Shown in pieces: positions 30,089-64,000 of a stretch of 64,000 nucleotides of DNA (position 1 is its first letter; each line of letters begins with the position of its first letter). The stretch comes from Paragordius varius. Lineage: Eukaryota; Animalia; Nematomorpha. The translations under genes were made by a program, and so were the position numbers. The stretch covers positions 13,392,001 through 13,456,000 of the forward strand of contig OZ176053.1 in the NCBI GenBank assembly GCA_964247055.1. Direction: 5' to 3'. The notes beneath the pieces are model-generated. The model was given only the letters and a program-made list of their open reading frames with translations. It searched no databases and was not told the origin of the DNA.

Positions 30089-31129
30089 ATATAGAGATAG
30101 TTGGACAAACTCTTTCATATCCGATTTTTACAACGATACTTAAACTAGTCGCATCAATACTCAAGTTAAATGTCAAAAATCGGATATTGGTCACCGGTGA
30201 ACAAAACTATTTTTTACAAATTCTTTTAGTAAGACTACATCAAAATATAGAGATAGTTTGACAAACTCTTTAATATCTGATTTTTACAACGATACTTTAA
30301 AAATTAATGTATAATTTAGCATACGACAATAATCAAGTTAAACTTTGTCCTTAAAAATCGGATATTGGTGACCGGTGAACGAAACTATTTTCTATACATT
30401 CTCTTAGAAGGACTACATTAAAATATAGAGATAGTTTGACAAACTCTTTCATATCCGATTTTTACAACGATACTTTAAAAATTAATGTATAAAACTAGTC
30501 GCATCAATACTCAAGTTAAACTTTGTCCTTAACAATCAGATATTGGTCACCGGTGAACAAAACTATTTTTTATACATTCTTTTAGTAACACTACATCAAA
30601 ATATAGAAATAGTTTGACTAACTCTTTCATATCCGATTTTTACAACGATACTTTGAAAATTAATGTATAAAACTAATCGCATCAATACTCAAGTTAAACT
30701 TTGTCCTTAAAAATCGGATATTGGTCTCGAACAAAATTATTTTTTATACATTCTCTTATTAAGACTACATCAAAATATAGAGATAGTTGGACAAACTCTT
30801 TCATATCCGATTTTTACAACGATACTTTAAAAATTAATGTATGAAACTAGTCGCATCAATACTCAAGTTAAACTTTGTCAAAAATCGGATATTGGTCACC
30901 GGTGAACAAAACTATTTTTTATACATTCTCTTAGTAAGACTACATCAAAATATAGAGATAGTTTGACAAACTCTTTCATATCCGATTTTTACAACGATAC
31001 TTTTAAAATTAATGTATAAAACTAATCGCATCAATACTCAAGTTAAACTTTGTCCTTAAAAATCGGATATTGGTCACCGGTGAACAAAATTATTTTTTAT
31101 ACATTCTCTTAGTAAGACTACATGAAAAT

Positions 31130-37100: not shown

Positions 37101-37800
37101 TCCTTCATATCCGATTTTTACAACGATACTTTAAAAATTAATGTATAAAACTAGTCGCATCAATACTCAAGTTAAACTTTGTCAAAAATCGGATATTGGT
37201 CACCGGTGAACAAAACTATTTTTTATACATTATCTTAGTAAGACTACATCAAAATATAGAGATAGTTTGACAAACTCTTTCATATCCGATTTTTACAACG
37301 ATACTTTTAAAATTAATGTATAAAACTAATCGCATCAATACTCAAGTTAAACTTTGTCCTTAAAAATCGGATATTGGTCACCGGTGAACAAAATTATTTT
37401 TTATACATTCTCTTAGTAAGACTACATGAAAATATAGAGATAGTTTGACAAACTCTTTCATATCCGATTTTTACAACGATACTTTAAAAATTAATGTATA
37501 AAACTAGTCGTATCAATACTCAAGTTAAACTTTGTTAAAAATTGGATATTGGTCACCGGTGAACAAAACTATTTTTTATACATTCTCTTAGTAAGACTAC
37601 ATCAAAATATAGAGATAGTTTGACAAACTCTTTCATATCCGATTTTTACAACGATACTTTTAAAATTAATGTATAAAACTAATCGCATCAATACTCAAGT
37701 TAAACTTTGTCCTTAAATATCGGATAATGGTCACCGGTGAACAAAATTATTTTTATACATTCTCTTAGTAAGACTACATGAAAATATAGAGATAGTTTGA
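31130..37800 (+). repeat. 9-monomer higher-order unit in three copies (~31130, ~32710, ~36230)
   Basis: ttaggct at 31291, 32870 and 36369, each followed in order by aaaataagat, gacatct, caatctc..gtgagac, ttatcc and the 14-bp deletion gactacatagtt. Confidence 0.88.
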
Positions 37801-40500: not shown

Positions 40501-43500
40501 TGTATAAAACTAATCGCTTCAACACTCAAGTTAAACTTTGTCCTTAAAAATCGGATATTGGTCACCGGTGAACAAAATTATTTTTTATACATTCTCTTAG
40601 TAAGACTACATGAAAATATAGAGATAGTTTGACAAACTCTTTCATATCCGATTTTTACAACGATACTTTAAAAATTAATGTATAAAACTAGTCGTATCAA
40701 TACTCAAGTTAAACTTTGTCCTTAAAAATCGGATATTGGTCACCGGTGAACAAAATTATTTTTTATACATTCTCTTATTAAGACTACATCAAAATATAGA
40801 GATAGTTGACAAACTCTTTAATATCTGATTTTTAGAGCGATACTTTAAAAATTAATGTATAATTTAGCACACGACAATAGGCAAGTTAAACTTTGTCCTT
40901 AAAAATCGGATATTAGTCGCCGGTAAAGAAAATAATTTTTATACATTCTCTAAGTAGTACTACATCAAAATATAGAGATAGTTTGACAAACTCTTTAATA
41001 TCTGATTTTTAGAGCGATACTTTAAAAATTAATGTATAATTAGCATACGACAATAAGCAGGTTAAACTTTGTCCTTAAAAATCGAATATTGGTCTCCGGT
41101 GAACAAAAGTATTTTTTATACATTCTCTTAGTAAGACTACATCAAAATATAGAGATAGTTTGACAAACTCTTTCATATCCGATTTTTACAAAAATACTTT
41201 TAAAATTAATGTATAAAACTAATCGCATCAATACTCAAGTTAAACTTTGTCCTTAAAAATCGGATATTGGTCACCGGTGAACAAAATTATTTTTTATACA
41301 TTCTCTTAGTAAGACTACATCAAAATATAGAGATAGTTTGATAAACTCTTTCATATCCGATTTTTACAACGATACTCTAAAAATTAATGCATAAAACTAG
41401 TCGTATCAATACTCAAGTTAAACTTTGTCCTTAAAAAACGGATATTGGGGATCGGTGAACAAAATTATTTTTTATACATTCTCTTATTAAGACTACATCA
41501 AAATATAGAGATAATTTGACAAACTCTATAATATCTGATTTTTAGAGCGATACTTTAAAAATTAATGTATAATTTAGCATACGACAATAAGCAAGTTAAA
41601 CTTTGTCCTTAAAAATCGGATATTAGTCGCCGGTAAGAAAATATTTTTTATACATTCTCTTAGTAGTACTACATCAAAATATAGAAATAGTCTGACAAAC
41701 TCTTTAATATCTGATTTTTAGCGCGATACTTTAAAAATTAATGTATAATTTAGCATACGACAATAAGCAAGTTAAACTTTATCCTTAAAAATCGGATATT
41801 GGTCTCCGGTGAACAAAATTATTTTTATACATTCTCTTATTAAGACTACATCAAAATATAGAGATAGTTTGACAAACTCTTTCATATCCGATTTTTACAA
41901 CGATACTTTAAAAATTAATGTATAAAACTAGTCGCATCAATACTCAAGTTAAGTCCTTAAAAATCGGATATTGGTCACCGGTGAACAAAATTATTTTTTA
42001 TACATTCTCTTAGTAAGACTACATGAAAATATAGAGATAGTTTGACAAACTCTTTCATATCCGATTTTTACAACGATACTTTAAAAATTAATGTATAAAA
42101 CTAATCGCATCAATACTCAAGTTAAACTTTGTCCTTAAAAATCGGATATTGGACACAGGTGAACAAAATTATTTTTATACATTCTCTTAGTAAGACTACA
42201 TGAAAATATAGAGATAGTTTGACAAACTCTTTCATATCCGATTTTTACAACGATACTTTAAAAATTAATGTATAAAACTAGTCGTATCAATACTCAAGTT
42301 AAACTTTGTCCTTAAAAATGATATTGGTCACCAGTGAACAAAATTATTTTTTATACATTCTCTTAGTAAGACTACATCAAAATATAGAGATAGTCTGATA
42401 AACTCTTTCATATCCGATTTTTACAACGATACTTTAAAAATTAATGCATAAAACTAGTCGTATCAATACTCAAGTTAAACTTTGTCCTTAAAAAACGGAT
42501 ATTGGGGATCGGTGAACAAAATTATTTTTTATACATTCTCTTATTAAGACTACATCAAAATATAGAGATAGTTTGACAAACTCTTTAATATCTGATTTTT
42601 AGAGCGATACTTAAAAAATTAATGTGTAATTTAGCATACGACAATAAGCAAGTTAAACTTCCTTAAAAATCGGATATTAGTCGCCGGTAAAGAAAATAAT
42701 ATTTATACATTCTCTTTGTAGTACTACATCAAAATATAGAGATAGTTTGACAAACTCTTTAATATCTGATTTTTAGAGCGATACTTTAAAATTAATGTAT
42801 AATTTAGCATACGACAATAAGCAAGTTAAACATTGTCCTTAAAAATCGGATATTGGTCTCCGTGAACAAAACTATTTTTTATACATTCTCTTAGTAAGAC
42901 TACATCAAAATATAGAGATAGTTTGACAAACTCTTTCATATCCGATTTTTACAACGATACTTTTAAAATTAATGTATAAAACTAATCGCATCAATACTCA
43001 AGTTAAACTTTGTCCTTAAAAATCGGATATTGGTCACCGGTGAACAAAATTATTTTTTATACATTCTCTTAGTAAGACTACATGAAAATATAGAGATAGT
43101 TTGACAAACTCTTTCATATCCGATTTTTAGAGCGATACTTTAAAAATTAATGTATAATTTAGCATACGACAATAGGCAAGTTAAACTTTGTCCTTAAAAA
43201 TCGGATATTAGTCGCCGGTAAAGAAAATAATTTTTATACATTCTCTAAGTAGTACTACATCAAAATATAGAGATGTTTGACAAACTCTTTAATATCTGAT
43301 TTTAGAACGATACTTTAAAAATTAATGTATAATTAGCATACGACAATAAGCAGGTTAAACTTTGTCCTTAAAAATCGAATATTGGTCTCCGGTGAACAAA
43401 ATTATTTTTTATACATTCTCTTATTAAGACTACATCAAAATATTAAGATAGTTTGACAAACTCTTTCATATCCGATTTTTACAACGATACTTTAAAAATT

Positions 43501-44499
43501 AATGTATAAAACTAGTCGCATCAATACTCAAGTTAAACTTTGTCCTTAAAAATCGGATATTGGTCACCGGTGAACAAAATTATTTTTTATACATTCTCTT
43601 AGTAAGACTACATCAAAATATAGAGATAGTCTGATAAACTCTTTCATATCCGATTTTTACAACGATACTTTAAAAATTAATGCATAAAACTAGTCGTATC
43701 AATACTCAAGTTAAACTTTGTCCTTAAAAAACGGATATTGGGGATCGGTGAACAAAATTATTTTTTATACATTCTCTTATTAAGACTACATCAAAATATA
43801 GAGATAGTTTGACAAACTCTATAATATCTGATTTTTAGAGCGATACTTTAAAAATTAATGTATAATTTAGCATACGACAATAAGCAAGTTAAACTTTGTC
43901 CTTAAAAATCGGATATTAGTCGCCGGTAAGAAAATAATTTTTTATACATTCTCTTAGTAGTACTACATCAAAATATAGAGATAGTTTGACAAACTCTTTA
44001 ATATCTGATTTTTAGAGCGATACTTTAAAAATTAATGTATAATTTAGCATACGACAATAAGCAAGTTAAACTTTGTCCTTAAAAATCGGATATTGGTCTC
44101 CGGTGAACAAAATTATTTTTATACATTCTCTTATTAAGACTACATCAAAATATAGAGATAGTTTGACAAACTCTTTCATATCCGATTTTTACAACGATAC
44201 TTTAAAAATTAATGTATAAAACTAGTCGCATCAATACTCAAGTTAAGTCCTTAAAAATCGGATATTGGTCACCGGTGAACAAAACTATTTTTTATACATT
44301 CTCTTAGTAAGACTACATGAAAATATAGAGATAGTTTGACAAACTCTTTCATATCCGATTTTTACAACGATACTTTAAAAATTAATGTATAAAACTAGTT
44401 GCATCAATACTCAAGTTAAACTTTGTCAAAAATCGGATATTGGTCACCGGTGAACAAAACTATTTTTTATACATTCTTTTAGTAAGACTACATCAAAAT

Positions 44500-46600
44500 A
44501 TAGAGATTGTTTGACAAACTCTTTAATATCTGATTTTTACGAGCGATACTTTAAAAATTAATGTATAATTTAGCATACGACAATAAGCAAGTTAAACTTT
44601 GTCCTTAAAAATCGGATATTAGTCGCCGGTAAAGAAAATAATTTTTAATACATTCTCTTACTAGTACTACATCAAAATATACAGATAGTTTGACAAACTC
44701 TTTAATATCTGATTTTTAGAGCGATACTATAATTTAGCATACGACAATAAGCAAGTTAAACTTTGTCCTTAAAAATCGGATATTAGTCGCCGGTAAAGAA
44801 AATAATTTTTTATACTTTTTCTTAGTAGGACTACATCAAAAAATAGAGATAGTTTGACAAACTCTTTCATATCCGATTTTTACAAAGATACTTTTAAAAT
44901 TAATGTATAAAACTAATCGCATGAATACTCAAGTTAAACGTTGTCCTTAAAAATCGGATATTGTTCACCGGTGACCTAAATTATTTTTTATACATTCTCT
45001 TAGTAAGACTACATGAAAATATAGAGATAGTTTGACAAACTCTTTCATATCCGATTTTTACAACGATACTTTAAAAATTAATGTATAATTTAGCATACGA
45101 CAATAAGCAAGTTAAACTTTGTCCTTAAAAATTGGATTTTGGTCTCCGATAAACAAAATTATTTTTTATACATTCTCTTATTAAGACTACATCAAAATAT
45201 AGAGATAGTTTGACAAACTCTTTCATATCCGATTTTTACAACGATACTTTAAAAATTAATGTATAAAACTAGTCGCATCAATACTCAAGTTAAACTTTGT
45301 CCTTAAAAATCGGATATTGGTCACCGGTGAACAAAACTATTTTTTATACATTCTTTTAGTAAGACTACATGAAAATATAGAGATAGTTTGACAAACTCTT
45401 TAATATCTGATTTTTACAACGATACTTTAAAAATTAATGTATAATTTAGCATACGATAATAAGCAAGTTAAACTTTGTCCTTAAAAATCGGATATTAGTC
45501 GCCGGTAAAGAAAATAATTTTTTATACATTCTCTTAGTAGGACTACATCAAAAAATAGAGATAGTTTGACAAACTCTTTCATATCCGATTTTTACAACGA
45601 TACTTTTAAAATTAATGTATAAAACTAATCGCATGAATACTCAAGTTAAACTTTGTCCTTAAAAATCGGATATTGGTCACCGGTAAAGAAAATAATTTTT
45701 TATACATTCTCTTAGTAGTACTACATCAAAATATAGAGATAGTTTGACAAACTCTTTAATATCTGATTTTATAGCGATACTTTTAAAATTAATGTATATA
45801 ACTAGTCGCATCAATACTCAAGTTAAACTTTGTCCTTAAAAATCGGATATTGGTCACCGGTGAACAAAATTATTTTTTATACATTCTCTTAGTAAGACTA
45901 CATGAAAATATAGAGATAGTTTGACAAACTCGTTAATATCTGATTTTTACGAGCGATACTTTAAAAATTAATGTATAATTTAGCATACGACAGTAAGCAA
46001 GTTAAACTTTGTCCTTAAAAATCGGATATTAGTCGCCGGTAAAGAAAATAATTTTTTATACATTCTCTTACTAGTACTACATCAAAATATAGAGATAGTT
46101 TGACAAACTCTTTAATATCTGATTTTTAAAGCGATACTATAATTTAGCATACGACAATAAGCAAGTTAAACTTTGTCCTTAAAAATCGGATATTAGTCGC
46201 CGGTAAAGAAAATAATTTTTTATACTTTTTCTTAGTAGGACTACATCATAAAATAGAGATAGTTTGACAAAGTCTTTCATATCCGATTTTTACAAAGATA
46301 CTTTTAAAATTAATGTATAAAACTAATCGCATGAATACTCAAGTTAAACTTTGTCCTTAAAAATCGGATATTGGTCACCGGTGACCTAAATTATTTTTTA
46401 TACATTCTCTTAGTAAGACTACATGAAAATATAGAGATAGTTTGACAAACTCTTTCATATCCGATTTTTACAACGATACTTTAAAAATTAATGTATAATT
46501 TAGCATACGACAATAAGCAAGTTAAACTTTGTCCTTAAAAATTGGATTTTGGTCTCCGATAAACAAAATTATTTTTTGTACATTCTCTTATTAAGACTAC
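44500..46600 (+). repeat. 8-monomer duplication, period 1410 bp
   Basis: tacgagcg at 44538 and 45948, each followed by the 14-bp deletion gatactataattt, tacttttt and caaagatac. Confidence 0.8.
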
Positions 46601-49399
46601 ATCAAAATATAGAGATAGTTTGACAAACTCTTTCATATCCGATTTTTACAACGATACTTTTAAAATTAATGTATAAAACTAATCGCATGAATACTCAAGT
46701 TAAACTTTGTCCTTAAAAATCGGATATTGGTCACCGGTAAAGAAAATAATTTTTTATACATTCTCTTACTAGTACTACATCAAAATATAGAGATAGTTTT
46801 ACAAACTCTTTAATATCTGATTTTTAGAGCGATACTATAATTTAGCATACGACAATAAGCAAGTTAAACTTTGTCCTTAAAAATCGGATATTAGTCGCCG
46901 GTAAAGAAAATAATTTTTTATACTTTTTCTTAGTAGGACTACATCAAAAAATAGAGATAGTTTGACAAACTCTTTCATATCCGATTTTTACAAAGATACT
47001 TTTAAAATTAATGTATAAAACTAGTCGCATCAATACTCAAGTTAAACTTTGTCCTTAAAAATCGGATATTGGTCACCGGTGAACAAAACTATTTTTTATA
47101 CATTCTTTTAGTAAGACTACATGAAAATATAGAGATAGTTTGACAAACTCTTTAATATTTGATTTTTACAACGATACTTTAAAAATTAATGTATAATTTA
47201 GCATACGACAATAAGCAAGTTAAACTTTGTCCTTAAAAATCGGATATTAGTCCCCGGTAAAGAAAATAATTTTTTATACATTCTCTTAGTAGGACTACAT
47301 CAAAAAATAGAGATAGTTTGACAAACTCTTTCATATCCGATTTTTACAACGATACTTTTAAAATTAATGTATAAAACTAATCGCATGAATACTCAAGTTA
47401 AACTTTGTCCTTAAAAATCGGATATTGGTCACCGGTAAAGAAAATAATTTTTTATACATTCTCTTAGTAGTACTACATCAAAATATAGAGATAGTTTGAC
47501 AAACTCTTTAATATCTGATTATTATAACGATACTTTAAAAATTAATGTATAAAACTAGTCGCATCAATACTCAAGTTAAACTTTGTCCTTAAAAATCGGA
47601 TATTGGTCACCGGTGAACAAAACTATTTTTTATACATTCTAGTAAGACTACATCAAAATATAGAGATAGTTTGATAAACTCTTTCATATCCGATTTTTAT
47701 AACGATACTTTAAAAATTAATGTATAAAACTAGTCGCATCAATACTCAAGCTAAACTTTGTCCTTAAAAATCGGATATTGGTCACCGGTGAACAAAACTA
47801 TTTTTTATACATTCTAGTAAGACTACATCAAAATATAGAGATAGTTTGACAAACTCTTTCATATCCGATTTTTACAACGATACTTTAAAAATTAATGTAT
47901 AAAACTAGTCGCATCAATATTCAAGTTAAACTTTGTCCTTAAAAATCGGATATTAGTCGCCGGTAAAAAAAATCATTTTTTATACATTCTCTTAGTAGTA
48001 CTACATCAAAATATAGAGATAGTTTGACAAACTCTTTATCTGATTTTTAGAGCGATACTTTAAAAATTAATGTATAATTTAGCATACGACAATAAGCAAG
48101 TTAAACTTTTTCCTTAAAAATCGGATATTAGTCGCCAGTAAAGAAAATAATTTTTTATACATTTTCTTAGTAGGACTACATCAAAAAATAGAGATAGTTT
48201 GACAAACTCTTTCATATCCGATTTTTACAACGATACTTTTAAAATTATGTATAAAACTAATCGCATGAATACTCAAGTTAAACTTTGTCCTTAAAAATCG
48301 GATATTGGTCACCGGTGACCAAAATTATTTTTTATACATTCTCTTAGTAAGACTACATGAAAGTATAGAGATAGTTTGACAAACTCTTTCATATCCGATT
48401 TTTACAACGATACTTTATAAATTAAAGTATAAAACTAGTCGCATCAATACTCAAGTTAAACTTTGTCAAAAATCGGATATTGGTCACCGGTGAACAAAAC
48501 TATTTTTTATATATTCTTTTAGTAAGACTACATCAAAATATAGATATAGTTTCACAAACTCTTTAATATCTGATTTTTACAACGATACTTTAAAAATTAA
48601 TGTATAATTTAGCATACGACAATATTCAAGTTAAACTTTGTCCTTAAAAATCGGATATTTGTCACCGGTGAACGAAACTATTTTCTATACATTCTCTTAG
48701 AAGGACTACATCAAAATATAGAGATAGTTTGACAAACTCTTTCATATCCGATTTCTACAACGATACTTTAAAAATTAATGTATAAAACTAGTCGCATCAA
48801 TACTCAAGTTAACCTTTGTCCTTAAAAATCGGATATTGGTCACCGGTGAATAAAATTATTTTTTATACATTCTCTTAGTAAGACTGCATCAAAATATAGA
48901 CATAGTTTGACAAACTCTTTCATATCCGATTTTTACAACGATACTTTAAAAATTAATGTATAAAACTAGTCGCATCAATATTCAAGTTAAACTTTGTCCT
49001 TAAAAATCGGATATTGGTCACCGGTGAACAAAACTATTTTTTATACTTCTTTTAGTAAGACTACATCAAAATATAGAGATAGTTTGATAAACTCTTTCAT
49101 ATCCAATTTTTACAACGATACTTTAAAAATTAATGTAAAAAACTAGTCGGATCAATACTCAAGTTAACCTTTGTCCTTAAAAATCGGATATTGGTCACCG
49201 GTGAATAAAATTATTTTTTATACATTCTCTTAGTAAGACTACATCAAAATATAGAGATAGTTTGACAAACTCTTTCATATCCGATTTTTACAACGATACT
49301 TTTAAAATTAATGTATAAAACTAATCGCATCAATACTCAAGTTAAACTTTGTCCTTAAAAATCGGATATTGGTCACCGGTGAACAAAACTATTTTTTAT

Positions 49400-52000
49400 G
49401 GACTCTCTTAGTAAGACTACATCAAAATATAGAGATAGTTTGACAAACTCTTTCATATCCGATTTTTAGAGCGATACTTTAAAAATTAATGTATAATTTA
49501 GCATACGACAATATGCAAGTTAAACTTTGTCCTTAAAAATCGGATATTAGTCGCCGGTAAAAAAAATAATTTTGAATACATTCTCTTAGTAGGACTACAT
49601 CAAAAAGTAGAGATAGTTTGACAAATTTTTTCATATCCGATTTTTACAACGATACTTTAAAAATTAATGTATAAAACGAGTCGCATCAATACTCAAGTTA
49701 AACTTTGTACTTAAAAATCGAATATTGGTCACCGGTGAACAAAATTATTTTTTATACATTCTCTTAGTAGGACTAATCAAAATATAGAGATAGTTTGACG
49801 AACTCTTTCATATCCGATTTTTACAACGATACTTTAAATATTAATGTATAAAACTAATCGCATCAATACTCAAGTTAAACTTTGTCCTTAAAAATCGGAT
49901 TTTGGTCACCGGTGAACAAAACTATTTTTTGTACATTCATTTAGTAAGACTACATCAAAATATAGAGATAGTTTGACAAACTCTTTCATATCCGATTTTT
50001 ACAACGATACTTTTAAAAATGTATAAAACTAATCGCATCAATACTCAAGTTAAACTTTGTCCTTAAAAATCGGATATTAGTCGCCGGTAAAGAAAATAAT
50101 TTTGAATACATTCTCTTAGTAGGACTACATCAAAAAGTAGAGATAGTTTGACAAACTCTTTCATATCCGATTTTTACAACGATACTTTAAAAATTAATGT
50201 ATAAAACTAATCGCATCAATACTCAAGTTAAACTTTGTCCTTAAAAATCGGATATTTGTCACCAGTGAACGAAACTATTTTTTATACATTCTCTTAGTAA
50301 GACTACATGAAAATATAGAGATAGTTTGACAAACTCTTTCATATCCGATTTTTACAACGATACTTTAAAAATTAATGTATAATTTAGCATACGACAATAA
50401 GCAAGTTAAACTTTGTCCTTAAAAATTGGATTTTGGTCTCCGGTAAACAAAATTATTTTTTATACATTCTCTTTTTAAGACTACATAAATATAGAGATAG
50501 TTTGACAAACTCTTTCATATCCGATTTTTACAACGATACTTTAAAAATTAATGTATAAAACTTGTCGCATCAATACTCAAGTTAAACTTTGTCCTTAAAA
50601 ATCGGATATTGGTCACCGGTGAACAAAACTATTTTTTATGGATTCTCTTAGTAGGACTACATCAAAATATAGACATAGTTTGACAAACTCTTTCATATCC
50701 GATTTTTACAACGATACTTTAAAAATTTATGTATAAAACTAGTCGCATCAACACTCAAGTTAAACTTTGTCCTTAAAAATCGGATATTGGTCACCGGTGA
50801 CCAAAATTATTTTTTATACATTCTCTTAGTAAGACTACATGAAAATATAGAGATAGTTTGACAAACTCTTTCATATCCGATTTTTACAACGATACTTTAA
50901 AAATTAATGTATAATTTAGCATACGACAATAAGCAAGTTAAACTTTGTCCTTAAAAATTGGATTTTGGTCTCCGGTAAACAAAATTATTTTTTATACATT
51001 CTCTTATTAAGACTACATCAAAATATGAGATAGTTTGACAAACTCTTTAATATCTGATTTTTAGAGCGATACTTTAAAAATTAATGTATAATTTAGCATA
51101 CGACAATATGCAAGTTAAACTCTGTCCTTAAAAATCGGATATTAGTCGCCGGTAAAGAAAATAATTTTGAATACATTCTCTTAGTAGGACTACATCAAAA
51201 AGTAGAGATAGTTTGACAAATTTTTTCATATCCGATTTTTACAACGATACATTAAAAATTAATGTATAAAACTAGTCGCATCAATACTCAAGTTAAACTT
51301 TGTACTTAAAAATCGAATATTGGTCACCGGTGAACAAAATTATTTTTTATACATTCTCTTAGTAGGACTAATCAAAATATAGAGATAGTTTGACAAACTC
51401 TTTCATATCCGATTTTTACAACGATACTTTAAAAATTAATGTATAAAACTAATTGCATCAATACTCAAGTTAAACTTTATCCTTAAAAATCGGATATTAG
51501 TCGCCGGTAAAGAAAATAATTTTTTATACATTCATTTAGTAAGACTACATCAAAATATAAAGATAGTTTGACAAACTCTTTCATATCCGATTTTTACAAC
51601 GATACTTTTAAAATTAATGTATAAAAATCGCATGAATACTCAAGTTAAACTTTGTCCTTAAAAATCGGATATTAGTCACCGGTGACCAAAATTATTTTTT
51701 ATACATTCTCTTAGTAAGACTACATGAAAATATAGAGATAGTTTGACAAACTCTTTCATATCCGATTTTTACAACGATACTTTAAAAATTAATGTATAAT
51801 TTAGCATACGACAATATGCAAGTTAAACTTTGTCCTTAAAAATCGGATATTAGTCGCCGGTAAAGAAAATAATTTTGAATACATTCTCTTAGTAGGACTA
51901 CATCAAAAAGTAGAGATAGTTTGACAAACTCTTTCATATCCGATTTTTACAACGATACTTTAAAAATTAATGTATAAAACTAATCGCATCAATACTCAAG
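49400..52000 (+). repeat. ~9-monomer duplication, period ~1595 bp
   Basis: tgtacttaaaaatcgaat at 49706 and 51301, with caatatgcaag, ttttgaatac, aaaagtagag and ggactaatc in the same order. Confidence 0.75.
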
Positions 52001-54920
52001 TTAAACTTTGTCCTTAAAAATCGGATTTTGGTCACCGGTGAACAAAACTATTTTTTGTACATTCATTTAGTAAGACTACATCAAAATATAAAGATAGTTT
52101 GACAAACTCTTTCATATCCGATTTTTACAACGACACTTTTAAAAATGTATAAAACTAATCGCATCAATACTCAGGTTAAACTTTGTCCTTAAAAATCGGA
52201 TATTTGTCACCAGTGAACGAAACTATTTTCTATACATTCTCTTAGAAGGACTACATCAAAATATAGAGATAGTTTGACAAACTCTTTCATATCCGATTTT
52301 TACAACGATACTTTTAAAATTAATGTATAAAAATCGCATGAATGCTCAAGTTAAACTTTGTCCTTAAAAATCGGATATTAGTCACCGGTGACCAAAATTA
52401 ATTTTTATACATTCTCTTAGTAAGACTACATGAAAATATAGAGATAGTTTGACAAACTCTTTCATATCCGATTTTTACAACGATACTTTAAAAATTAATG
52501 TATAATTTAGCATACGACAATAAGCAAGTTAAACTTTGTCCTTAAAAATTGGATTTTGGTCTCCGGTAAACAAAATTATTTTTTATACATTCTCTTATTA
52601 AGACTACATCAAAATATAGAGATAGTTTGACAAACTCTTTCATATCCGATTTTTACAACGATACTTTAAAAATTAATGTATAAAACTAGTCGCATCAATA
52701 CTCAAGTTAAACTTTGTCCTTAAAAATCGGATATTGGTCACCGGTGAACAAAACTATTTTTTATGGATTCTCTTAGTAAGACTACATCAAAATATAGACA
52801 TAGTTTGACAAACTCTTTCATATCCGATTTTTACAACGATACTTTTAAAATTAATGTATAAAACTAATCGCATCAATACTCAAGTTAAACTTTGTCCTTA
52901 AAAATCGGATATTGGTCACCGGTGAACAAAATTATTTTTTATACATTCTCTTAGTAAGACTACATCAAAATATAGAGATAGTTTGACAAACTCTTTCATA
53001 TCCGATTTTTACAACGATACTTTAAAAATTAATGTAAAAAACTAGTCGTAAAATACTCAAGTTAAACTTTGTCGTAAATCGGATATTGGTCACCGGTGAA
53101 CAAAATTATTTTTTATACATTCTCTTATTAAGACTACATCAAAATATCGAGATAGTTTGACAAACTCTTTAATATCTGATTTTTAGAGCGATACTTTAAA
53201 AATTAATGTATAATTTAGCATACGACAATAAGCAAGTTAAACTTCCTTAAAAATCGGATATTAGTCGCCGGTAAAGAAAATAATTTTTTATACATTCTCT
53301 TAGTAGTACTACATCAAAATATAGAGATAGTTTGACAAACTCTTTAATATCTGATTTTTAGAGCGATACTACTTAAATTAATGTATAATTTAGCATACGA
53401 CAATAAGCAAGTTAAACATTGTCCTTACAAATCGGATATTGGTCTCCGTGAACAAAACTATTTTTTATACATTCTCTTAGTAAGACTACATCAAAATATA
53501 GAGATAGTTTGACAAACTCTTTCATATCCGATTTTTACAAAGATACTTTTAATATTAATGTATAAAACTAATCGCATCAATACTCAAGTTAAACTTTGTC
53601 CTTAAAAATCGGATATTGGTCACCGGTGAACAAAATTATTTTTTATACATTCTCTTAGTAAGACTACATGAAAATATAGAGATAGTTTGACAAACTCTTT
53701 CATATCCGATTTTTACAACGATACTTTAAAAATTAATGTATAAAACTAGTCGTATCAATACTCAAGTTAAACTTTGTCCTTAAAAATCGGATATTGGTAA
53801 CCAGTGAACAAAATTATTTTTTATACATTCTCTTATTAAGACTACATCAAAATATAGAGATAGTTTGACAAACTCTTTAATATCTGATTTTTAGAGCGAT
53901 ACTTTAAAAATTAATGTATAATTTAGCATACGACAATAAGCAAGTTAAACTTCCTTAAAAATCGGATATTAGTCGCCGGTAAAGAAAATAATTTTTTATA
54001 CATTCTCTTAGTAGTACTACATCAAAATATAGAGATAGTTTGACAAACTCTTTAATATCTGATTTTTAGAGCGATACTTTAAAATTAATGTATAATTTAG
54101 CATACGACAATAAGCAAGTTAAACATTGTCCTTAAAAATCGGATATTGGTCTCCGTGAACAAAACTATTTTTTATACATTCTCTTAGTAAGACTACATCA
54201 AAATATAGAGATAGTTTGACAAACTCTTTCATATCCGATTTTTACAACGATACTTTTAAAATTAATGTATAAAACTAATCGCATCAATACTCAAGTTAAA
54301 CTTTGTCCTTAAAAATCGGATATTGGTCACCGGTGAACAAAATTATTTTTTATACATTCTCTTAGTAAGACTACATGAAAATATAGAGATAGTTTGACAA
54401 ACTCTTTCATATCCGATTTTTACAACGATACTTTTAAAATTAATGTATAAAACTAATCGCATCAATACTCAAGTTAAACTTTGTCCTTAAAAATCGGATA
54501 TTGGTCACCGGTGAACAAAATTATTTTTTATACATTCTCTTATTAAGACTACATCAAAATATAGAGATAGTTGACAAACTCTTTAATATCTGATTTTTAG
54601 AGCGATACTTTAAAAATTAATGTATAATTTACCATACGACAATAGGCAAGTTAAACTTTGTCCTTAAAAATCGGATATTAGTCGCCGGTAAAGAAAATAA
54701 TTTTTATACATTCTCTAAGTAGTACTACATCAAAATATAGAGATAGTTTGACAAACTCTTTAATATCTGATTTTTAGAACGATACTTTAAAAATTAATGT
54801 ATAATTAGCATACGACAATAAGCAGGTTAAACTTTGTCCTTAAAAATCGAATATTGGTCTCCGGTGAACAAAATTATTTTTTATACATTCTCTTATTAAG
54901 ACTACATCAAAATATAGAGA

Positions 54921-54950
54921 TAGTTTGACAAACCCGGCGACTAATATCCG
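54921..54950. other. Strand-switch (inversion) junction at 54933/54934
   Basis: tagtttgacaaac|ccggcgactaatatccg: the forward monomer ends at ...gacaaac, followed by the reverse complement of ...cggatattagtcgccgg. No inserted bases or microhomology. Confidence 0.95.
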
Positions 54951-56270
54951 ATTTTTAAGGAAGTTTAACTTGCTTATTGTCGTATGCTAAATTATACATT
55001 AATTTTTAAAGTATCGCTCTAAAAATCAGATATTAAAGAGTTTGTCAAACTATCTCGATATTTTGATGTAGTCTTAATAAGAGAATGTATAAAAAATAAT
55101 TTTGTTCACCGGTGACCAATATCCGATTTTTAACGACAACGTTTAACTTGAGTATTGATACGACTAGTTTTATACATTAATTTTTAAAGTATCGTTGTAA
55201 AAATCGGATATGAAAGAGTTTGTCAAACTATCTCTATATTTTCATGTAGTCTTACTAAGAGAATGTATAAAAAATAATTTTGTTCACCGGTGACCAATAT
55301 CCGATTTTTAAGGACAAAGTTTAACTTGAGTATTGATGCGATTAGTTTTATACATTAATTTTAAAAGTATCGTTGTAAAAATCGGATATGAAAGAGTTTG
55401 TCAAACTATCTCTATATTTTGATGTAGTCTTACTAAGAGAATGTATAAAAAATAGTTTTGTTCACCGGTGACCAATATCCGATTTTTGACAAAGTTTAAC
55501 TTGAGTATTGATGCGACTAGTTTTATACATTAATTTTTAAAGTATCGTTGTAAAAATCGGATATGAAAGAGTTTGTCCAACTATCTCTATATTTTGATGT
55601 AGTCTTAATAAGAGAATGTATAAAAAATAATTTTGTTCGAGACCAATATCCGATTTTTAAGGACAAAGTTTAACTTGAGTATTGATGCGATTAGTTTTAT
55701 ACATTAATTTTCAAAGTATCGTTGTAAAAATCGGATATGAAAGAGTTAGTCAAACTATTTCTATATTTTGATGTAGTGTTACTAAAAGAATGTATAAAAA
55801 TAATTTTGTTCACCGGAGACCAATATCCGATTTTTAAGGACAAAGTTTAACTTGCTTATTGTCGTATGCTAAATTATACATTAATTTTTAAAGTATCGCT
55901 CTAAAAATCAGATATTATAGAGTTTGTCAAACTATCTCTATATTTTGATGTAGTCTTAATAAGAGAATGTATAAAAAATAATTTTGTTCACCGATCCCCA
56001 ATATCCGTTTTTTAAGGACAAAGTTTAACTTGAGTATTGATACGACTAGTTTTATGCATTAATTTTTAAAGTATCGTTGTAAAAATCGGATATGAAAGAG
56101 TTTATCAAACTATCTCTATATTTTGATGTAGTCTTACTAAGAGAATGTATAAAAAATAATTTTGTTCACCGGTGACCAATATCCGATTTTTAAGGACAAA
56201 GTTTAACTTGAGTATTGATGCGACTAGTTTTATACATTAATTTTTAAAGTATCCTTGTAAAAATCGGATA
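54934..56270 (-). repeat. Inverted ~1.34-kb block (~7.5 monomers) of left-array (AB-type) haplotypes
   Basis: Carries reverse complements of left-array variants: tttagcatacgacaataagc, ggtctcgaac, ggggatcggtg, tgtcaaaaatc, agtaacactac, aatatcgagat. Confidence 0.9.
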
Positions 56271-56315
56271 TTTAATACATTAATTTTTAAAGTATCGTTG
56301 TAAAAATCGGATATG
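56232..56315. other. Out-of-register junction at ~56270/56271 (43-bp partial duplication, equivalently ~135-bp deletion)
   Basis: atacattaatttttaaagtatc.ttgtaaaaatcggatat occurs at 56232 and again at 56275; junction reads cggatat/ttaatacatt. Confidence 0.9.
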
Positions 56316-59300
56316 AAAGAGTTTGTCAAACTATCTCTATATTTTGATGTAGTCTTGCTAAGAGAATATATAAAAAATAATTTTGTTCACCGGTGACCAA
56401 TATCCGATATTTAAGGACAAAGTTTAATTTGAGTATTGATGCGACTAGTTTAATACATTAATTTTTAAAGTATCGTTGTAAAAATCGGATATGAAAGAGT
56501 TTGGCAAACTATTTCTATATTTTGATGTAGTCTTACTAAGAGAATGTATAAAAAATTATTTTGTTCACCGGTGACCAATATCCGATTTTTAAGGACAAAG
56601 TTTAACTTGAATATTGATGCGACTAGTTTAATACATTAATTTTTAAAGTATCGTTGTAAAAATCGGATATGAAAGAGTTTGTCAAACTATCTCTATATTT
56701 TGATGTAGTCTTGCTAAGAGAATGTATAAAAAATAATTTTGTTCACCGGTGACCAATATCCGATTTTTAAGGACAAAGTTTAACTTGAGTATTGATGCGA
56801 CTAGTTTAATACATTAATTTTTAAAGTATCGTTGTAAAAACCGGATATGAAAGAGTTTGTCAAACTATCTCTATATTTTGATGTAGTCTTACTAAGAGAA
56901 TGTATAAAAAATTATTTTGTTCACCGGTGACCAATATCCGATTTTTAAGGACAAAGTTAACTTGAGTATTGACTAGTTTAATACATTAATTTTTAAAGTA
57001 TCGTTGTAAAAATCGGATATGAAAGAGTTTGGCAAACTATTTCTATATTTTGATGTAGTCTTACTAAGAGAATGTATAAAAAATAATTTTGTTCACCGGT
57101 GACCAATATCCGATTTTTAAGGACAAAGTTTAACTTGAATATTGATGCGACTAGTTTAATACATTAATCTTTAAAGTATCGTTGTAAAAATCGGATATGA
57201 AAGAGTTTGTCAAACTATCTCTATATTTTGATGTAGTCTTGTGAAGAGAATATATAAAAAATAATTTTGTTCACCGGTGACCAATATCCGATTTTTAAGG
57301 ACAAAGTTTAATTTGAGTATTGATGCGACTAGTTTAATACATTAATTTTTAAAGTATCGTTGTAAAAACCGGATATGAAAGAGTTTGTCAAACTATTTCT
57401 ATATTTTGATGTAGTCTTACTAAGAGAATGTATAAAAAATTATTTTGTTCACCGGTGAACAATATCCGATTTTTAAGGACAAAGTTTAACTTGAGTATTG
57501 ATGCGACTGGTTTAATACCATAATTTTTAAAGTATCGTTGTAAAAATCGGATATGAAAGAGTTTGTCAAACTATCTCTATATTTTGATGTAGTCTTACTA
57601 AGAGAATGTATAAAAAATTATTTTGTTTACCGGTGACCAATATCCGATTTTTAAGGACAAAGTTTAATTAGAGTATTGATGCGACTTATTGATTCGACTA
57701 GTTTTATACATTAATTTATAAAGTATCGTTGTAAAAATCGGATATGAAAGAGTTTGGCAAACTATTTCTATATTTTGATGTAGTCTTACTAAGAGAATGT
57801 ATAAAAAATTATTTTGTTCACCGGTGACCAATATCCGATTTTTAAGGACAAAGTTTAACTTGAATATTGATGCGACTAGTTTAATACATTAATTTTTAAA
57901 GTATCGTTGTAAAAATCGGATATGAAAGAGTTTGTCAAACTATCTCTATATTTTGATGTAGTCTTGCTAAGAGAATGTATAAAAAATAATTTTGTTCACC
58001 GGTGACCAATATCCGATTTTTAAGGACAAAGTTTAACTTGAGTATTGATGCGACTAGTTTAATACATTAATTTTTAAAGTATCGTTGTAAAAACCGGATA
58101 TGAAAGAGTTTGTCAAACTAACTCTATATTTTGATGTAGTCTTACTAAGAGAATGTATAAAAAATTTATTTTGTTCACCGGTGACCAATATCCGATTTTT
58201 AAGGACAAAGTTAACTTGAGTATTGACTAGTTGAATACATTAATTTTTAAAGTATCGTTGTAAAAATCGGATATGAAAGAGTTTGGCAAACTATTTCTAT
58301 ATTTTGATGTAGTCTTACTAAGAGAATGTATAAAAAATAATTTTGTTCACCGGTGACCAATATCCGATTTTTAAGGACAAAGTTTAACTTGAATATTGAT
58401 GCGACTAGTTTAATACATTAATCTTTAAAGTATCGTTGTAAAAATCGGATATGAAAGAGTTTGTCAAACTATCTCTATATTTTGATGTAGTCTTGTGAAG
58501 AGAATATATAAAAAATAATTTTGTTCACCGGTGACCAATATCCGATTTTTAAGGACAAAGTTTAATTTGAGTATTGATGCGACTAGTTTAATACATTAAT
58601 TTTTAAAGTATCGTTGTAAAAACCGGATATGAAAGAGTTTGTCAAACTATTTCTATATTTTGATGTAGTCTTACTAAGAGAATGTATAAAAAATTATTTT
58701 GTTCACCGGTGAACAATATCCGATTTTTAAGGACAAAGTTTAACTTGAATATTGATGCGACTAGTTTAATACATTAATCTTTAAAGTATCGTTGTAAAAA
58801 TCGGATATGAAAGAGTTTGTCAAACTATCTCTATATTTTGATGTAGTCTTGCTAAGAGAATATATAAAAAATAATTTTGTTCACCGGTGACCAATATCCG
58901 ATATTTAAGGACAAAGTTTAATTTGAGTATTGATGCGACTAGTTTAATACATTAATTTTTAAAGTATCGTTGTAAAAATCGGATATGAAAGAGTTTGGCA
59001 AACTATTTCTATATTTTGATGTAGTCTTACTAAGAGAATGTATAAAAAATTATTTTGTTCACCGGTGACCAATATCCGATTTTTAAGGACAAAGTTTAAC
59101 TTGAATATTGATGCGACTAGTTTAATACATTAATTTTTAAAGTATCGTTGTAAAAATCGGATATGAAAGAGTTTGTCAAACTATCTCTATATTTTGATGT
59201 AGTCTTGCTAAGAGAATTTATAAAAAATAATTTTGTTCACCGGTGACCAATATCCGATTTTTAAGGATAAAGTTTAACTTGAGTATTGATGCGACTAGTT

Positions 59301-62300
59301 TAATACATTAATTTTTAAAGTATCGTTGTAAAAACCGGATATGAAAGAGTTTGTCAAACTATCTCTATATTTTGATGTAGTCTTACTAAGAGAATGTATA
59401 AAAAATTATTTTGTTCACCGGTGACCAATATCCGATTTTTAAGGACAAAGTTAACTTGAGTATTGATGCGACTAGTTTAATACATTAATTTTTAAAGTAT
59501 CGTTGTAAAAATCGGATATGAAAGAGTTTGTCAAACTATCTCTATATTTTGATGTGGTCTTACTAAGAGAATGTATAAAAAATAATTTTGTTCACCGGTG
59601 ACCAATTTTCGATTTTTAAGGACAAAGTTTAACTTGAGTATTGAAGCGAATTATTGATACAACTAGTTTTATACATTAATTTTTAAAGTATCGTTGTAAA
59701 AATCGGATATGAAAGAGTTTGTCAAACTATCTCTATATTTTGATGTAGTCTTGTGAAGAGAATATATAAAAAATAATTTTGTTCACCGGTGACCAATATC
59801 CGATTTTTAAGGACAAAGTTTAATTTGAGTATTGATGCGACTAGTTTAATACATTAATTTTTAAAGTATCGTTGTAAAAATCGGATATGAAAGAGTTTGT
59901 CAAACTATCTCTATATTTTGATGTAGTCTTGCTAAGAGAATGTATAAAAAATAATTTTGTTCACCGGTGACCAATATTCGATTTTTAAGGACAAAGTTTA
60001 ACTTGAGTATTGATGCGACTAGTTTAATACATTAATTTTTAAAGTATCGTTGTAAAAATCGGATATGAAAGAGTTTGTCAAACTATTTCTATATTTTGAT
60101 GTAGTCTTACTAAGAGAATGTATAAAAAATTATTTTGTTCACCGGTGAACAATATCCGATTTTTAAGGACAAAGTTTAACTTGAGTATTGATGCGACTGG
60201 TTTAATACCATAATTTTTAAAGTATCGTTGAAAAAATCGGATATGAAAGAGTTTGTCAAACTATTTCTATATTTTGATGTAGTCTTACTAAGAGAATGTA
60301 TAAAAAATTATTTTGTTCACCGGTGAACAATATCCGATTTTTAAGGACAAAGTTTAACTTGAGTATTGATGCGACTGGTTTAATACCATAATTTTTAAAG
60401 TATCGTTGTAAAAATCGGATATGAAAGAGTTTGTCAAACTATCTCTATATTTTGATGTAGTCTTACTAAGAGAATGTATAAAAAATTATTTTGTTTACCG
60501 GTGACCAATATCCGATTTTTAAGGACAAAGTTTAACTAGAGTATTGATGCGACTTATTGATTCGACTAGTTTTATACATTAATTTATAAAGTATCGTTGT
60601 AAAAATCGGATATGAAAGAGTTTGTCAAACTATCTCTATATTTTGATGTAGTCTTGCTAAGAGAATGTATAAAAAATAATTTTGTTCACCGGTGACCAAT
60701 ATCAGATTTTTAAGGACAAAGTTTAACTTGAGTATTGATGCGACTAGTTTAATACATTAATTTTTAAAGTATCGTTGTAAAAATCGGATATGAAAGAGTT
60801 TGTCAAACTATCTCTATATTTTGATGTAGTCTTGCTAAGAGAATATATAAAAAATAATTTTGTTCACCGGTGACCAATATCCGATATTTAAGGACAAAGT
60901 TTAATTTGAGTATTGATGCGACTAGTTTAATACATTAATTTTTAAAGTATCGTTGTAAAAATCGGATATGAAAGAGTTTGTCAAACTATCTCTATTTTGA
61001 TGTAGTCTTACTAAGAGAATGTATAAAAAATTATTTTGTTCACCGGTGACCAATATCCGATTTTTAAGGACAAAGTTTAACTTGAGTATTGATGCGACTA
61101 GTTTAATACATTAATTTTTAAAGTATCGTTGTAAAAACCGGATATGAAAGAGTTTGTCAAACTATCTCTATATTTTGATGTAGTCTTACTAAGAGAATGT
61201 ATAAAAAATTATTTTGTTCACCGGTGACCAATATCCGATTTTTAAGGACAAAGTTAACTTGAGTATTGATGCGACTAGTTTAATACATTAATTTTTAAAG
61301 TATCGTTGTAAAAATCGGATATGAAAGAGTTTGTCAAACTATCTCTATATTTTGATGTGGTCTTACTAAGAGAATGTATAAAAAATAATTTTGTTCACCG
61401 GTGACCAATATTCGATTTTTAAGGACAAAGTTTAACTTGAGTATTGAAAGGATTTATTGATACAACTAGTTTTATACATTAATTTTTAAAGTATCGTTGT
61501 AAAAATCGGATATGAAAGAGTTTGTCAAACTATCTCTATATTTTGATGTATTCTTGTGAAGAGAATATATAAAAAATAATTTTGTTCACCGGTGACCAAT
61601 ATCCGATTTTTAAGGACAAAGTTTAATTTGAGTATTGATGCGACTAGTTTAATACATTAATTTTTAAAGTATCGTTGTAAAAATCGGATATGAAAGAGTT
61701 TGTCAAACTATTTCTATATTTTGATGTAGTCTTACTAAGAGAATGTATAAAAAATTATTTTGTTCACCGGTGAACAATATCCGATTTTTAAGGACAAATG
61801 TTAACTTGAGTATTGATGCGACTGGTTTAATACCATAATTTTTAAAGTATCGTTGTAAAAATCGGATATGAAAGAGTTTGTCAAACTATCTCTATATTTT
61901 GATGTAGTCTTACTAAGAGAATGTATAAAAAATTATTTTGTTTACCGGTGACCAATATCCGATTTTTAAGGACAAAGTTTAACTAGAGTATTGATGCGAC
62001 TTATTGATTCGACTAGTTTTATACATTAATTTATAAAGTATCGTTGTAAAAATCGGATATGAAAGAGTTTGTCAAACTATCTCTATATTTTGATGTAGTC
62101 TTGCTAAGAGAATGTATAAAAAATAATTTTGTTCACCGGTGACCAATATCAGATTTTTATGGACAAAGTTTAACTTGAGTATTGATGCGACTAGTTTAAT
62201 ACATTAATTTTTAAAGTATCGTTGTAAAAATCGGATATGAAAGAGTTTGTCAAACTATCTCTATATTTTGATGTAGTCTTGCTAAGAGAATATATAAAAA

Positions 62301-64000
62301 ATAATTTTGTTCACCGGTGACCAATATCCGATATTTAAGGACAAAGTTTAATTTGAGTATTGATGCGACTAGTTAAATACATTAATTTTTAAAGTATCGT
62401 TGTAAAAATCGGATATGAAAGAGTTTGTCAAACTATCTCTATATTTTGATGTAGTCTTGCTAAGAGAATGTATAAAAAATAATTTTGTTCACCGGTGACC
62501 AATATCAGATTTTTAAGGACAAAGTTTAACTTGAGTATTGATGCGACTAGTTTAATACATTAATTTTTAAAGTATCGTTGTAAAAATCGGATATGAAAGA
62601 GTTTGTCAAACTATCTCTATATTTTGATGTAGTCTTGCTAAGAGAATGTATAAAAAATAATTTTGTTCACCGGTGACCAATATCAGATTTTTAAGGACAA
62701 AGTTTAACTTGAGTATTGATGCGACTAGTTTAATACATTAATTTTTAAAGTATCGTTGTAAAAATCGGATATGAAAGAGTTTGTCAAACTATCTCTATAT
62801 TTTGATGTAGTCTTGCTAAGAGAATATATAAAAAATAATTTTGTTCACCGGTGACCAATATCCAATATTTAAGGACAAAGTTTAATTTGAGTATTGATGC
62901 GACTAGTTTAATACATTAATTTTTAAAGTATCGTTGTAAAAATCGGATATGAAAGAGTTTGTCAAACTATCTCTATTTTGATGTAGTCTTACTAAGAGAA
63001 TGTATAAAAAATTATTTTGTTCACCGGTGACCAATATCCGATTTTTAAGGACAAAGTTTAACTAGAGTATTGATGCGACTTATTGATACGACTAGTTTTA
63101 TACATTAATTTATAAAGTATCGTTGTAAAAATCGGATATGAAAGAGTTTGTGAAACTATTTCTATATTTTGATGTAGTCTTGCTAATGTATAAAAAATAA
63201 TTTTGTTCACCGGTGACCAATATCCGATTTTTAAGGACAAAGTTTAACTTGAGTATTGATGCGACTAGTTTAATACATTAATTTTTAAAGTATCGTTGTA
63301 AAAATCGGATATGAAAGAGTTTGGCAAACTATTTCTATATTTTGATGTAGTCTTACTAAGAGAATGTATAAAAAATTATTTTGTTCACCGGTGACCAATA
63401 TCCGATTTTTAAGGACAAAGTTTAACTTGAATATTGATGCGACTAGTTTAATACATTAATTTTTAAAGTATCGTTGTAAAAATCGGATATGAAAGAGTTT
63501 GTCAAACTATCTCTATATTTTGATGTAGTCTTGCTAAGAGAATGTATAAAAAATAATTTTGTTCACCGGTGACCAATATCCGATTTTTAAGGACAAAGTT
63601 TAACTTGAGTATTGATGCGACTAGTTTAATACATTAATTTTTAAAGTATCGTTGTAAAAACCGGATATGAAAGAGTTTGTCAAACTATCTCTATATTTTG
63701 ATGTAGTCTTACTAAGAGAATGTATAAAAAATTATTTTGTTCACCGGTGACCAATATCCGATTTTTAAGGACAAAGTTAACTTGAGTATTGATGCGACTA
63801 GTTTAATACATTAATTTTTAAAGTATCGTTGTAAAAATCGGATATGAAAGAGTTTGTCAAACTATCTCTATATTTTGATGTGGTCTTACTAAGAGAATGT
63901 ATAAAAAATAATTTTGTTCACCGGTGACCAATATTCGATTTTTAAGGACAAAGTTTAACTTGAGTATTGAAGCGATTTATTGATACAACTAGTTTTATAC
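56271..64000 (-). repeat. Distal homogeneous A-type satellite domain
   Basis: No B-type monomers. Contains (as reverse complements) gtattaaactag, ttagcaagac, gtttggcaaa/gtttgccaaa-type variants, tatggtattaaaccag and the 13-bp duplication. Confidence 0.85.
56470..58700 (-). repeat. 7-monomer higher-order repeat in the reverse domain, period 1253 bp
   Basis: ttggcaaactatttct at 56501 and 57754; ordered variants repeat (aaaaccgg, gagtattgactag deletion, attaatctt, gtcttgtgaag); 7x178 + 13 - 6 = 1253. Confidence 0.88.

What the first reader, a model, noticed from the sequence alone, without database searches (positions are those of the whole stretch)
54921..54950. Blunt strand-switch junction with both breakpoints inside monomer palindromes
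Seen: the array flips orientation at 54933/54934 with no filler or microhomology. The left break is one base short of the end of agtttgacaaac|t. The right break cuts the central motif of a B1 monomer (gtcgccgg|t). Established: orientation switches in satellite arrays mark rearrangement points, and hairpin/cruciform DNA is breakage-prone. Inference: this is one end of a large inversion joined by end-joining at structure-prone sites.
Basis: partly seen in the sequence, partly recalled or inferred. Interest (0 to 1): 0.75.

Follow-up and report, generated by a model that had tools for sequence, protein, structure and literature searches.

The report
Small inversion junction in satellite array
The orientation flip is a real, clean-cut rearrangement junction in an animal's 178-letter satellite DNA, but it bounds a flipped piece of only 1.3 kb rather than a large inversion, and the link to DNA hairpins is not supported; this is an ordinary kind of satellite rearrangement.

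Summary
Observation confirmed. The 178-bp satellite flips strand at 54933/54934, with no filler and no microhomology. The left break follows ...gtttgacaaac. The right break starts at ccggcgac of a B1-type monomer.

Interpretation only partly holds.
- The DNA right of the flip that resembles the left array is just 1,337 bp (54934-56270, 7.5 monomers).
- It ends at a second irregular junction, J2 (56270/56271). Beyond J2 lies a different reverse-oriented subfamily (R1).
- The left array ends at monomer position 178 and the block's far end is position 7. This is what one break of a local inversion with 6 bp lost would leave.
- The junction 30-mer occurs exactly twice, 362,548 bp apart on the same contig. 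Flanks differ by 0.71%, so the junction is old and unlikely to be a chimeric artefact.

"Structure-prone palindromes" is not supported.
- Palindromes with stems of 5 bp or more cover 31% of the monomer, so both ends fall in one about 10% of the time by chance.
- The B1 core is a degenerate palindrome.
- Neither site folds better than shuffled sequence.

Strand switches in satellites are well known in human centromeres and in Tribolium. Not human DNA.

The parts
1..54933 (+). F1: forward array of the 178-bp satellite. It has a 356-bp dimer and higher-order repeats, including B1/E-type monomers. Its last monomers follow the pattern ...EGAAEGAAEG.
   Evidence: TRF; BLAST orientation map; monomer model and typing
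54933..54934 (.). J1: blunt forward-to-reverse junction. Model position 178 on the left is joined to position 110 (reverse strand) on the right.
   Evidence: The 30-mer across it occurs exactly twice in the assembly.
54934..56270 (-). Inverted block of 1,337 bp: 7.5 monomers of F1 type in reverse orientation (positions 110 to 1, six full monomers, then 178 to 7).
   Evidence: Each monomer has a 97-100% twin in F1 but only 83-98% in R1. The best contiguous source in F1 is 95.0%. The neighbouring mirror image is only 90-92%.
56228..56313 (-). J2 at 56270/56271: an out-of-phase join within one orientation (block position 7 to R1 position 49). It creates two 43-bp near-copies that differ at 2 positions, one of F1 type and one of R1 type.
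   Evidence: (221-bp period). The second genomic copy lacks 221 bp here and is back in phase.
56271..64000 (-). R1: reverse-oriented array of a different, very homogeneous subfamily. It continues to 77482 in extended coordinates, where a 173-bp satellite begins.
   Evidence: From 56321 on, every monomer has a 100% twin in R1. Block map; TRF of L009.
54745..54757 (+). An intact example of the 6+1+6 imperfect palindrome agtttgacaaact at a normal monomer boundary. This is the parental-type site of the left break.
   Evidence: fold z = -0.21
54681..54688 (+). Nearest forward B1/E-type core gtcgccgg, the parental-type site of the right break. J1 therefore makes an imperfect inverted repeat with a 245-bp spacer.
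   Evidence: (54688-54331 against 54934-55289, 96.7%); fold z = +0.31

Best explanation
J1 is one of the two junctions of a small rearrangement. A 1,337-bp piece (7.5 monomers) of the forward array F1 lies flipped between F1 and a reverse-oriented array of another subfamily, R1.

The most likely history is as follows.
1. F1 already abutted R1 head to head.
2. Two double-strand breaks occurred. One was inside F1 just after ...gacaaac. The other was at or next to the old F1|R1 boundary.
3. The released terminal piece was re-ligated in reverse by end joining.

This produced J1, which is blunt, and J2 (56270/56271), where 6 bp were lost and at most 1 bp of microhomology is present. The rearranged region was later carried along in a segmental duplication of at least 25 kb, 362.5 kb away. 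One copy then lost 221 bp at J2 by recombination between monomers.

Shown: the two junctions, the monomer types, the phases, and the two diverged copies. Inferred: the order of events, the pre-existing boundary, and end joining as the repair route.
For: - Monomer types change exactly at J2. The eight monomers 54934-56272 have 97-100% twins in F1. From 56321 on, all monomers have 100% twins in R1.
- J2 is a true phase break, from model position 7 to position 49. Its two 43-bp halves are of F1 type and R1 type.
- F1 ends at position 178 and the block's far end is position 7. This is what the two sides of one break look like after a 6-bp loss. The chance of a match this close is about 0.04.
- Left flank plus reversed block aligns end to end with F1 paralogues at 95.4%, so monomer order is consistent.
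- The block is not a copy of any extant contiguous stretch (best 95.0%). That is expected for an inversion and not for a duplication.
- Structural anomalies of 15 bp or more are rare, about 15 in 208 kb of satellite. Two of them 1.3 kb apart are therefore likely linked.
- The J1 30-mer occurs twice. Over 5 kb the flanks differ by 35 substitutions (0.71%) with J1 identical. Window 34500-34799 has a 99% twin at C4:13780829, which is about 20.4 kb left of J1.
Against: - The other break does not show phase continuity. Block position 110 now faces F1, and R1 starts at position 49 on the reverse strand. The model therefore needs a pre-existing irregular head-to-head boundary exactly where the second break fell.
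- The 34-mer of that predicted ancestral boundary was not found anywhere in the assembly.
- I noticed the phase match after the fact. Among the ten breakpoint ends in the 264 kb, a few near-coincidences are expected by chance.
- No reads, no second individual and no outgroup were available.
Confidence: 0.5

Rival explanations
1. Insertion rather than inversion. A free or newly copied 1.34-kb piece of F1-type satellite was placed in reverse orientation into an existing F1|R1 head-to-head boundary. The piece could be a captured fragment or circle, or the product of two replication template switches.
For: It gives the same two irregular junctions and the same type change. The predicted ancestral boundary for the inversion model was not found.
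Against: No contiguous donor above 95.0% exists in the 264 kb held. This model does not predict the phase match between the end of F1 (178) and the block's far end (7), whose chance is about 0.04. It also does not predict the consistent monomer order across the rebuilt joint.
Confidence: 0.25
2. Fold-back inverted duplication. A broken F1 end folded back and copied itself. Later turnover of the arrays blurred the mirror symmetry, and J2 is a later, unrelated event.
For: J1 creates an inverted repeat with a 245-bp spacer, and its first 356 bp are 96.7% complementary.
Against: The mirror-image neighbour matches the block at only 90-92%, worse than distant F1 stretches at 95%. There is no microhomology at J1. 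The type change coincides exactly with J2.
Confidence: 0.08
3. J1 is one end of a large inversion, and the other end lies downstream of the window.
For: The reverse orientation continues for 22.5 kb to 77482.
Against: The predicted reciprocal junction is absent genome-wide. The reverse tract ends against a different 173-bp satellite at model position 70, which is not in phase with position 178. The subfamily changes at J2.
Confidence: 0.05
4. Assembly artefact. This would be a chimeric join, or two haplotypes stitched into one contig.
For: Satellite arrays are hard to assemble and no reads could be inspected. The two copies might be allelic rather than paralogous.
Against: The identical junction was assembled twice in flanks that differ by 35 substitutions and several indels. 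The R1|Sat2 junction (J3, 77482/77483) and the F2|R2 flip (J5, near 194952 in extended coordinates) lie between the two copies, and each is unique in the assembly.
Confidence: 0.05

Closest known systems
Strand switches (inversion breakpoints) inside human satellite arrays, T2T-CHM13 (bioRxiv 10.1101/2021.07.12.452052)
   Same: Both show abrupt changes of monomer orientation inside otherwise head-to-tail arrays. That paper reports a 1.7-Mb inversion in the chromosome 1 alpha-satellite array and over 200 breakpoints in HSat3B5 and beta satellite. Such breakpoints are inherited and can be polymorphic.
   Different: This is an unrelated 178-bp, 27% G+C satellite in a small (110 Mb) animal genome. 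Here the junction was resolved to the base, and its partner junction was found 1.3 kb away.
Macro-dyad symmetries of Tribolium major and minor satellites (PMC13081366)
   Same: Both have sub-arrays of tens of kb in alternating orientation, intermingled with a second satellite. Here the blocks are 55, 22.5, 62 and 59 kb, with 55 kb of a 173-bp satellite between a reverse and a forward block.
   Different: In Tribolium the inversion-site sequences are conserved in thousands of copies. Here the J1 30-mer has 2 copies, and the other junctions tested are unique.
Two-break inversion repaired by non-homologous end joining (general knowledge, not tested here)
   Same: Blunt or 1-bp-microhomology joins, a loss of a few bp at one break, and no gain of copy number.
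   Different: Only one of the two breaks shows phase continuity. The other must have fallen at an older array boundary.

Membership tests
Two-break inversion joined by end joining | Orientation switch with a partner junction at the other end of the flipped segment | tested here: met
   J1 at 54933/54934 and J2 at 56270/56271. The monomer type changes exactly at J2.
Two-break inversion joined by end joining | The two sides of break 1 are contiguous in the unit's phase, apart from small losses | tested here: met
   F1 ends at model position 178 and the block's far end is position 7, so 6 bp are lost. Chance is about 0.04.
Two-break inversion joined by end joining | The two sides of break 2 are contiguous in phase and orientation | tested here: not met
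   The block starts at position 110, while R1 starts at position 49 on the opposite strand. This requires a pre-existing head-to-head boundary, and its predicted 34-mer was not found.
Two-break inversion joined by end joining | Junctions blunt or with minimal microhomology, and no templated filler | tested here: met
   J1 has 0 bp of microhomology and 0 bp of filler. J2 has at most 1 bp.
Fold-back inverted duplication | The reverse arm is a mirror copy of the sequence just left of a short spacer | tested here: not met
   The mirror neighbour matches at 90-92% over 1,337 bp, against 95.0% for a distant F1 stretch.
Tribolium-type macro-dyad with conserved inversion site | The inversion-site sequence is conserved across many arrays | tested here: not met
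   The J1 30-mer occurs 2 times. The 30-mer of J5 (the F2|R2 flip) and the 35-mer of J3 (the R1|Sat2 junction) each occur once.
Tribolium-type macro-dyad with conserved inversion site | Alternating-orientation sub-arrays of tens of kb mixed with a minor satellite | tested here: met
   Block map of 264 kb. The minor satellite has a 173-bp period.
Palindrome- or cruciform-directed breakage | Breakpoints are enriched in inverted repeats and the sites are predicted to fold | tested here: not met
   Palindromes cover 31% of the monomer. 5 of 10 breakpoint ends lie inside one (p = 0.18). Folds at the sites have z = -0.21, +0.31 and -0.38 against shuffles. With only 10 ends this is weak evidence against enrichment rather than an exclusion of it.

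The most novel reading that the evidence does not exclude
The 13-bp imperfect palindrome agtttgacaaact at the monomer boundary could be a recurrent breakage or joining hot spot. The forward-array side of two of the three strand switches in the 264 kb falls within 2 bp of its 3' edge. These are J1 at model position 178 and J6, the reverse-to-forward switch near 254160 in extended coordinates, at position 177. If this holds across all the strand switches in this genome, it would mean sequence-directed formation of macro-dyad satellite architecture in an animal outside Tribolium.
Probability: 0.12. Interest if true: 0.5.

Novelty: new member of a known kind. Interest (0 to 1): 0.22.

Why it matters
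Base-resolved junctions inside satellite arrays are still scarce outside human and a few model genomes. They are the only direct record of how arrays are rearranged. This one shows a small end-joined inversion at an array edge, later copied 362 kb away and partly smoothed by recombination. That gives a relative order of events in a fast-turning-over region. It does not reveal a new mechanism. As a unique 30-mer pair, it is a practical marker for checking the assembly and for genotyping.

Tried and rejected
The second copy is therefore known only over 5 kb (L002, L005) plus one 300-bp probe.
- Two own-genome DNA searches returned nothing scorable ('too many letters').
- I tested whether J1 is a 49-bp deletion derivative of the other forward-to-reverse junction, J5 (194952/194953 in extended coordinates). 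Both start the reverse arm with the only two reverse-oriented ccggcgac monomers in 264 kb. I rejected this. The J5 monomer is a hybrid type that also occurs forward in the second forward block, F2. The flanks are no closer to each other than to other array members. The J5 30-mer is unique.
- I tested whether the right arm mirrors the left arm. It does not.
- An Rfam scan of 53000-58000 found nothing.
- A literature search by monomer sizes did not identify the satellite or the species.
- The window start (1-800) has no twin above 97%. The duplicated tract therefore ends somewhere between 20 and 54 kb left of J1, unless the search missed it.

Full report
**What is there.** The window is a 178-bp, 27% G+C satellite throughout, with a 356-bp dimer and higher-order structure. 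It is G000:C4:13392001-13456000, near the end of a 14.2-Mb contig in a 110.6-Mb assembly of 44 contigs. Earlier notes of this scan call the organism a very AT-rich animal. I did not verify the taxon. It is not human: the satellite and the genome size are both wrong for that. The same satellite lies near the ends of contigs C1, C2, C3, C5 and C7.

**The observation.**
- Strand-specific motifs change sides exactly at 54933/54934. gtttgacaaac occurs 213 times on the left and 0 on the right. Its complement occurs 0 times on the left and 40 on the right. BLAST with a dimer gives the same boundary.
- I built a 178-position monomer model that starts just after gacaaac.
- In that frame the left array ends at position 178. 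The first reverse monomer covers positions 110 to 1.
- All 60 forward GTCGCCGG cores in the sequence held are followed by T. The forward array continues with T after gacaaac.
- The join ...caaac|ccggcgac... therefore has no microhomology and no filler.

**The palindrome claim.**
- agtttgacaaact is a 6+1+6 imperfect palindrome.
- The perfect tcaccggtga exists only in A-type monomers. The B1/E-type monomer that was cut reads gtcgccggta.
- Exact inverted repeats with stems of 5 bp or more cover 56 of 178 consensus positions. Both ends fall in one with probability about 0.10.
- Across all ten breakpoint ends that I could place in 264 kb, five lie in such palindromes against 3.1 expected (p = 0.18).
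- Single-strand DNA folds of 41-nt windows at the parental-type sites give -2.3, -1.8 and -3.4 kcal/mol. These are z = -0.21, +0.31 and -0.38 against shuffles.
- The 'structure-prone' inference is not supported.

**Wider context.** I fetched the next 200 kb. In extended coordinates (window coordinate, continued; add 13,392,000 for the contig) the blocks are as follows.

| Block | Coordinates | Orientation / content |
|---|---|---|
| F1 | 1-54933 | forward |
| reverse tract | 54934-77482 | reverse |
| Sat2 | 77483-132910 | unrelated 173-bp satellite |
| F2 | 132911-194952 | forward |
| R2 | 194953-254156 | reverse |
| F3 | from 254167 | forward |

This region is therefore a mosaic of sub-arrays of tens of kb in alternating orientation. 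J1 is one of at least three strand switches in it.

**The partner junction.**
- Typing every monomer against each block shows a sharp change. The eight monomers 54934-56272 have 97-100% twins in F1 on the opposite strand, but only 83-98% in the rest of the reverse tract. From 56321 onward, every monomer has a 100% twin in that tract, R1.
- The change coincides with an irregular join at 56270/56271, which I call J2. The reverse monomer stops at ...aaaaatcggatat (model position 7). The next starts ttaatacatt... (position 49). This leaves two 43-bp near-copies that differ at two positions, the first of F1 type and the second of R1 type. TRF sees this as a 221-bp period.
- The inverted F1-type material is therefore 1,337 bp, or 7.5 monomers.
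- It is not a mirror of its neighbour (90-92%). It has no contiguous source better than 95.0% in the 264 kb.

**Phase argument.**
- In a two-break inversion, the retained end and the far end of the flipped piece were neighbours before the break.
- Here they are positions 178 and 7, so 6 bp are missing. A match this close has a chance of about 0.04.
- Placing the reversed block after the left flank, with six unknown bases, gives a sequence that aligns end to end to F1 paralogues at 95.4%. Monomer order is therefore consistent, though this test is weak.
- Structural anomalies of 15 bp or more are rare, about 15 in 208 kb of satellite. This also argues that J1 and J2 belong together.
- The other break does not close. 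Block position 110 and R1 position 49 are on opposite strands.
- F1 and R1 must therefore already have met head to head at an irregular boundary, and the second break fell there. A 34-mer for that ancestral boundary is absent from the assembly. That is uninformative if both extant copies carry the inversion.

- The reciprocal junction (gatatNaaaga|taaagaaaataa, up to 2 mismatches) has only unrelated hits, no more than the reversed-pattern control.
- If the whole 22.5-kb reverse tract had been flipped, its far end (position 70, abutting the 173-bp satellite) should be in phase with position 178. It is not.

**Age and reality.**
- The 30-mer across J1 occurs exactly twice, at C4:13446919 and C4:13809467, both on the + strand.
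- Over the 5 kb I hold for the second copy, the two copies differ by 35 substitutions (0.71%) and a few 3-bp indels, while J1 is identical.
- Window 34500-34799, about 20.4 kb left of J1, has a 99% twin at C4:13780829, against 95% or less elsewhere. The duplicated tract therefore reaches at least 20 kb to the left, with about 8 kb of array length change between the copies.
- The window's first 800 bp have no such twin.
- To the right, orthology stops at J2. The second copy lacks 221 bp (43 + 178) there and runs in phase from the block into R1-type monomers.
- The retained 43-mer is the R1-type one, and the type boundary sits exactly at J2. The out-of-phase state in the window is therefore the older one. 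The second copy was smoothed by recombination between monomers.
- The R1|Sat2 junction and the F2|R2 junction are each unique in the assembly.
- A random chimeric join would not be assembled twice in diverged flanks. I cannot exclude that the two copies are alleles placed in one contig.

**Relation to the other flip.**
- The only two reverse-oriented ccggcgac cores in 264 kb sit right at the two forward-to-reverse switches.
- I tested whether J1 is a 49-bp deletion derivative of the second switch, and rejected it.
- The second switch's monomer is a hybrid type that is also present forward in F2. The flanks are not specially related.

**Comparison with what is known.**
- Strand switches inside satellite arrays are well documented in the complete human genome.
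- Alternating sub-arrays mixed with a minor satellite are described as macro-dyad symmetries in Tribolium. There the inversion sites are conserved thousands of times. Here they are not.
- This junction is a new instance of a known kind of event.

**Verdict.** The interpretation needs scaling down. J1 is the left edge of a 1.34-kb flipped piece at an array boundary. It is joined without homology, and it is old enough to have been duplicated. There is no demonstrable role for the short palindromes.

Noticed in passing
G000:C4:13469483-13524910 (L007:3483 to L012:8910): A 55.4-kb array of an unrelated 173-bp satellite (95% matches) sits between a reverse and a forward block of the 178-bp satellite. 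The flanking blocks therefore form a large inverted repeat around it. The same 173-bp satellite occurs near the ends of C1, C2, C3, C5 and C7, and again on C4 at 13.85-13.87 Mb.
   Followed up: partly
L018:8952/8953 (C4:13586952/3): A second forward-to-reverse switch. The forward side breaks at model position 16. The reverse side starts inside the tctta-g-taaga palindrome (about position 141). Its first monomer is a rare hybrid B1/A type. The 30-mer is unique in the assembly.
   Followed up: yes
L024:8140-8166 (C4:13646140-13646166): A reverse-to-forward switch with a 17-bp partial direct duplication (tattgatacgattagtt) as filler. The forward side starts at model position 177, within 2 bp of the J1 left break. 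The reverse side ends at position 49, the same phase at which R1 starts at J2.
   Followed up: partly
window 57561-64000 and L006-L025: Many monomers are 191 bp rather than 178 bp, carrying a 13-bp insertion. This variant is rare in F1, scattered in R1 and dominant in long stretches of R2.
   Followed up: no
L017-L018 (extended coordinates about 172000-186000): The F2 block contains a long higher-order repeat with a period of about 4,066 bp (about 23 monomers), seen as BLAST hits at 174051, 178117 and 182183.
   Followed up: no
window 18570-18602: A 33-bp insertion between two complete monomers (TRF period 211). It is one of only about 15 structural anomalies of 15 bp or more in 208 kb of this satellite.
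   Followed up: no
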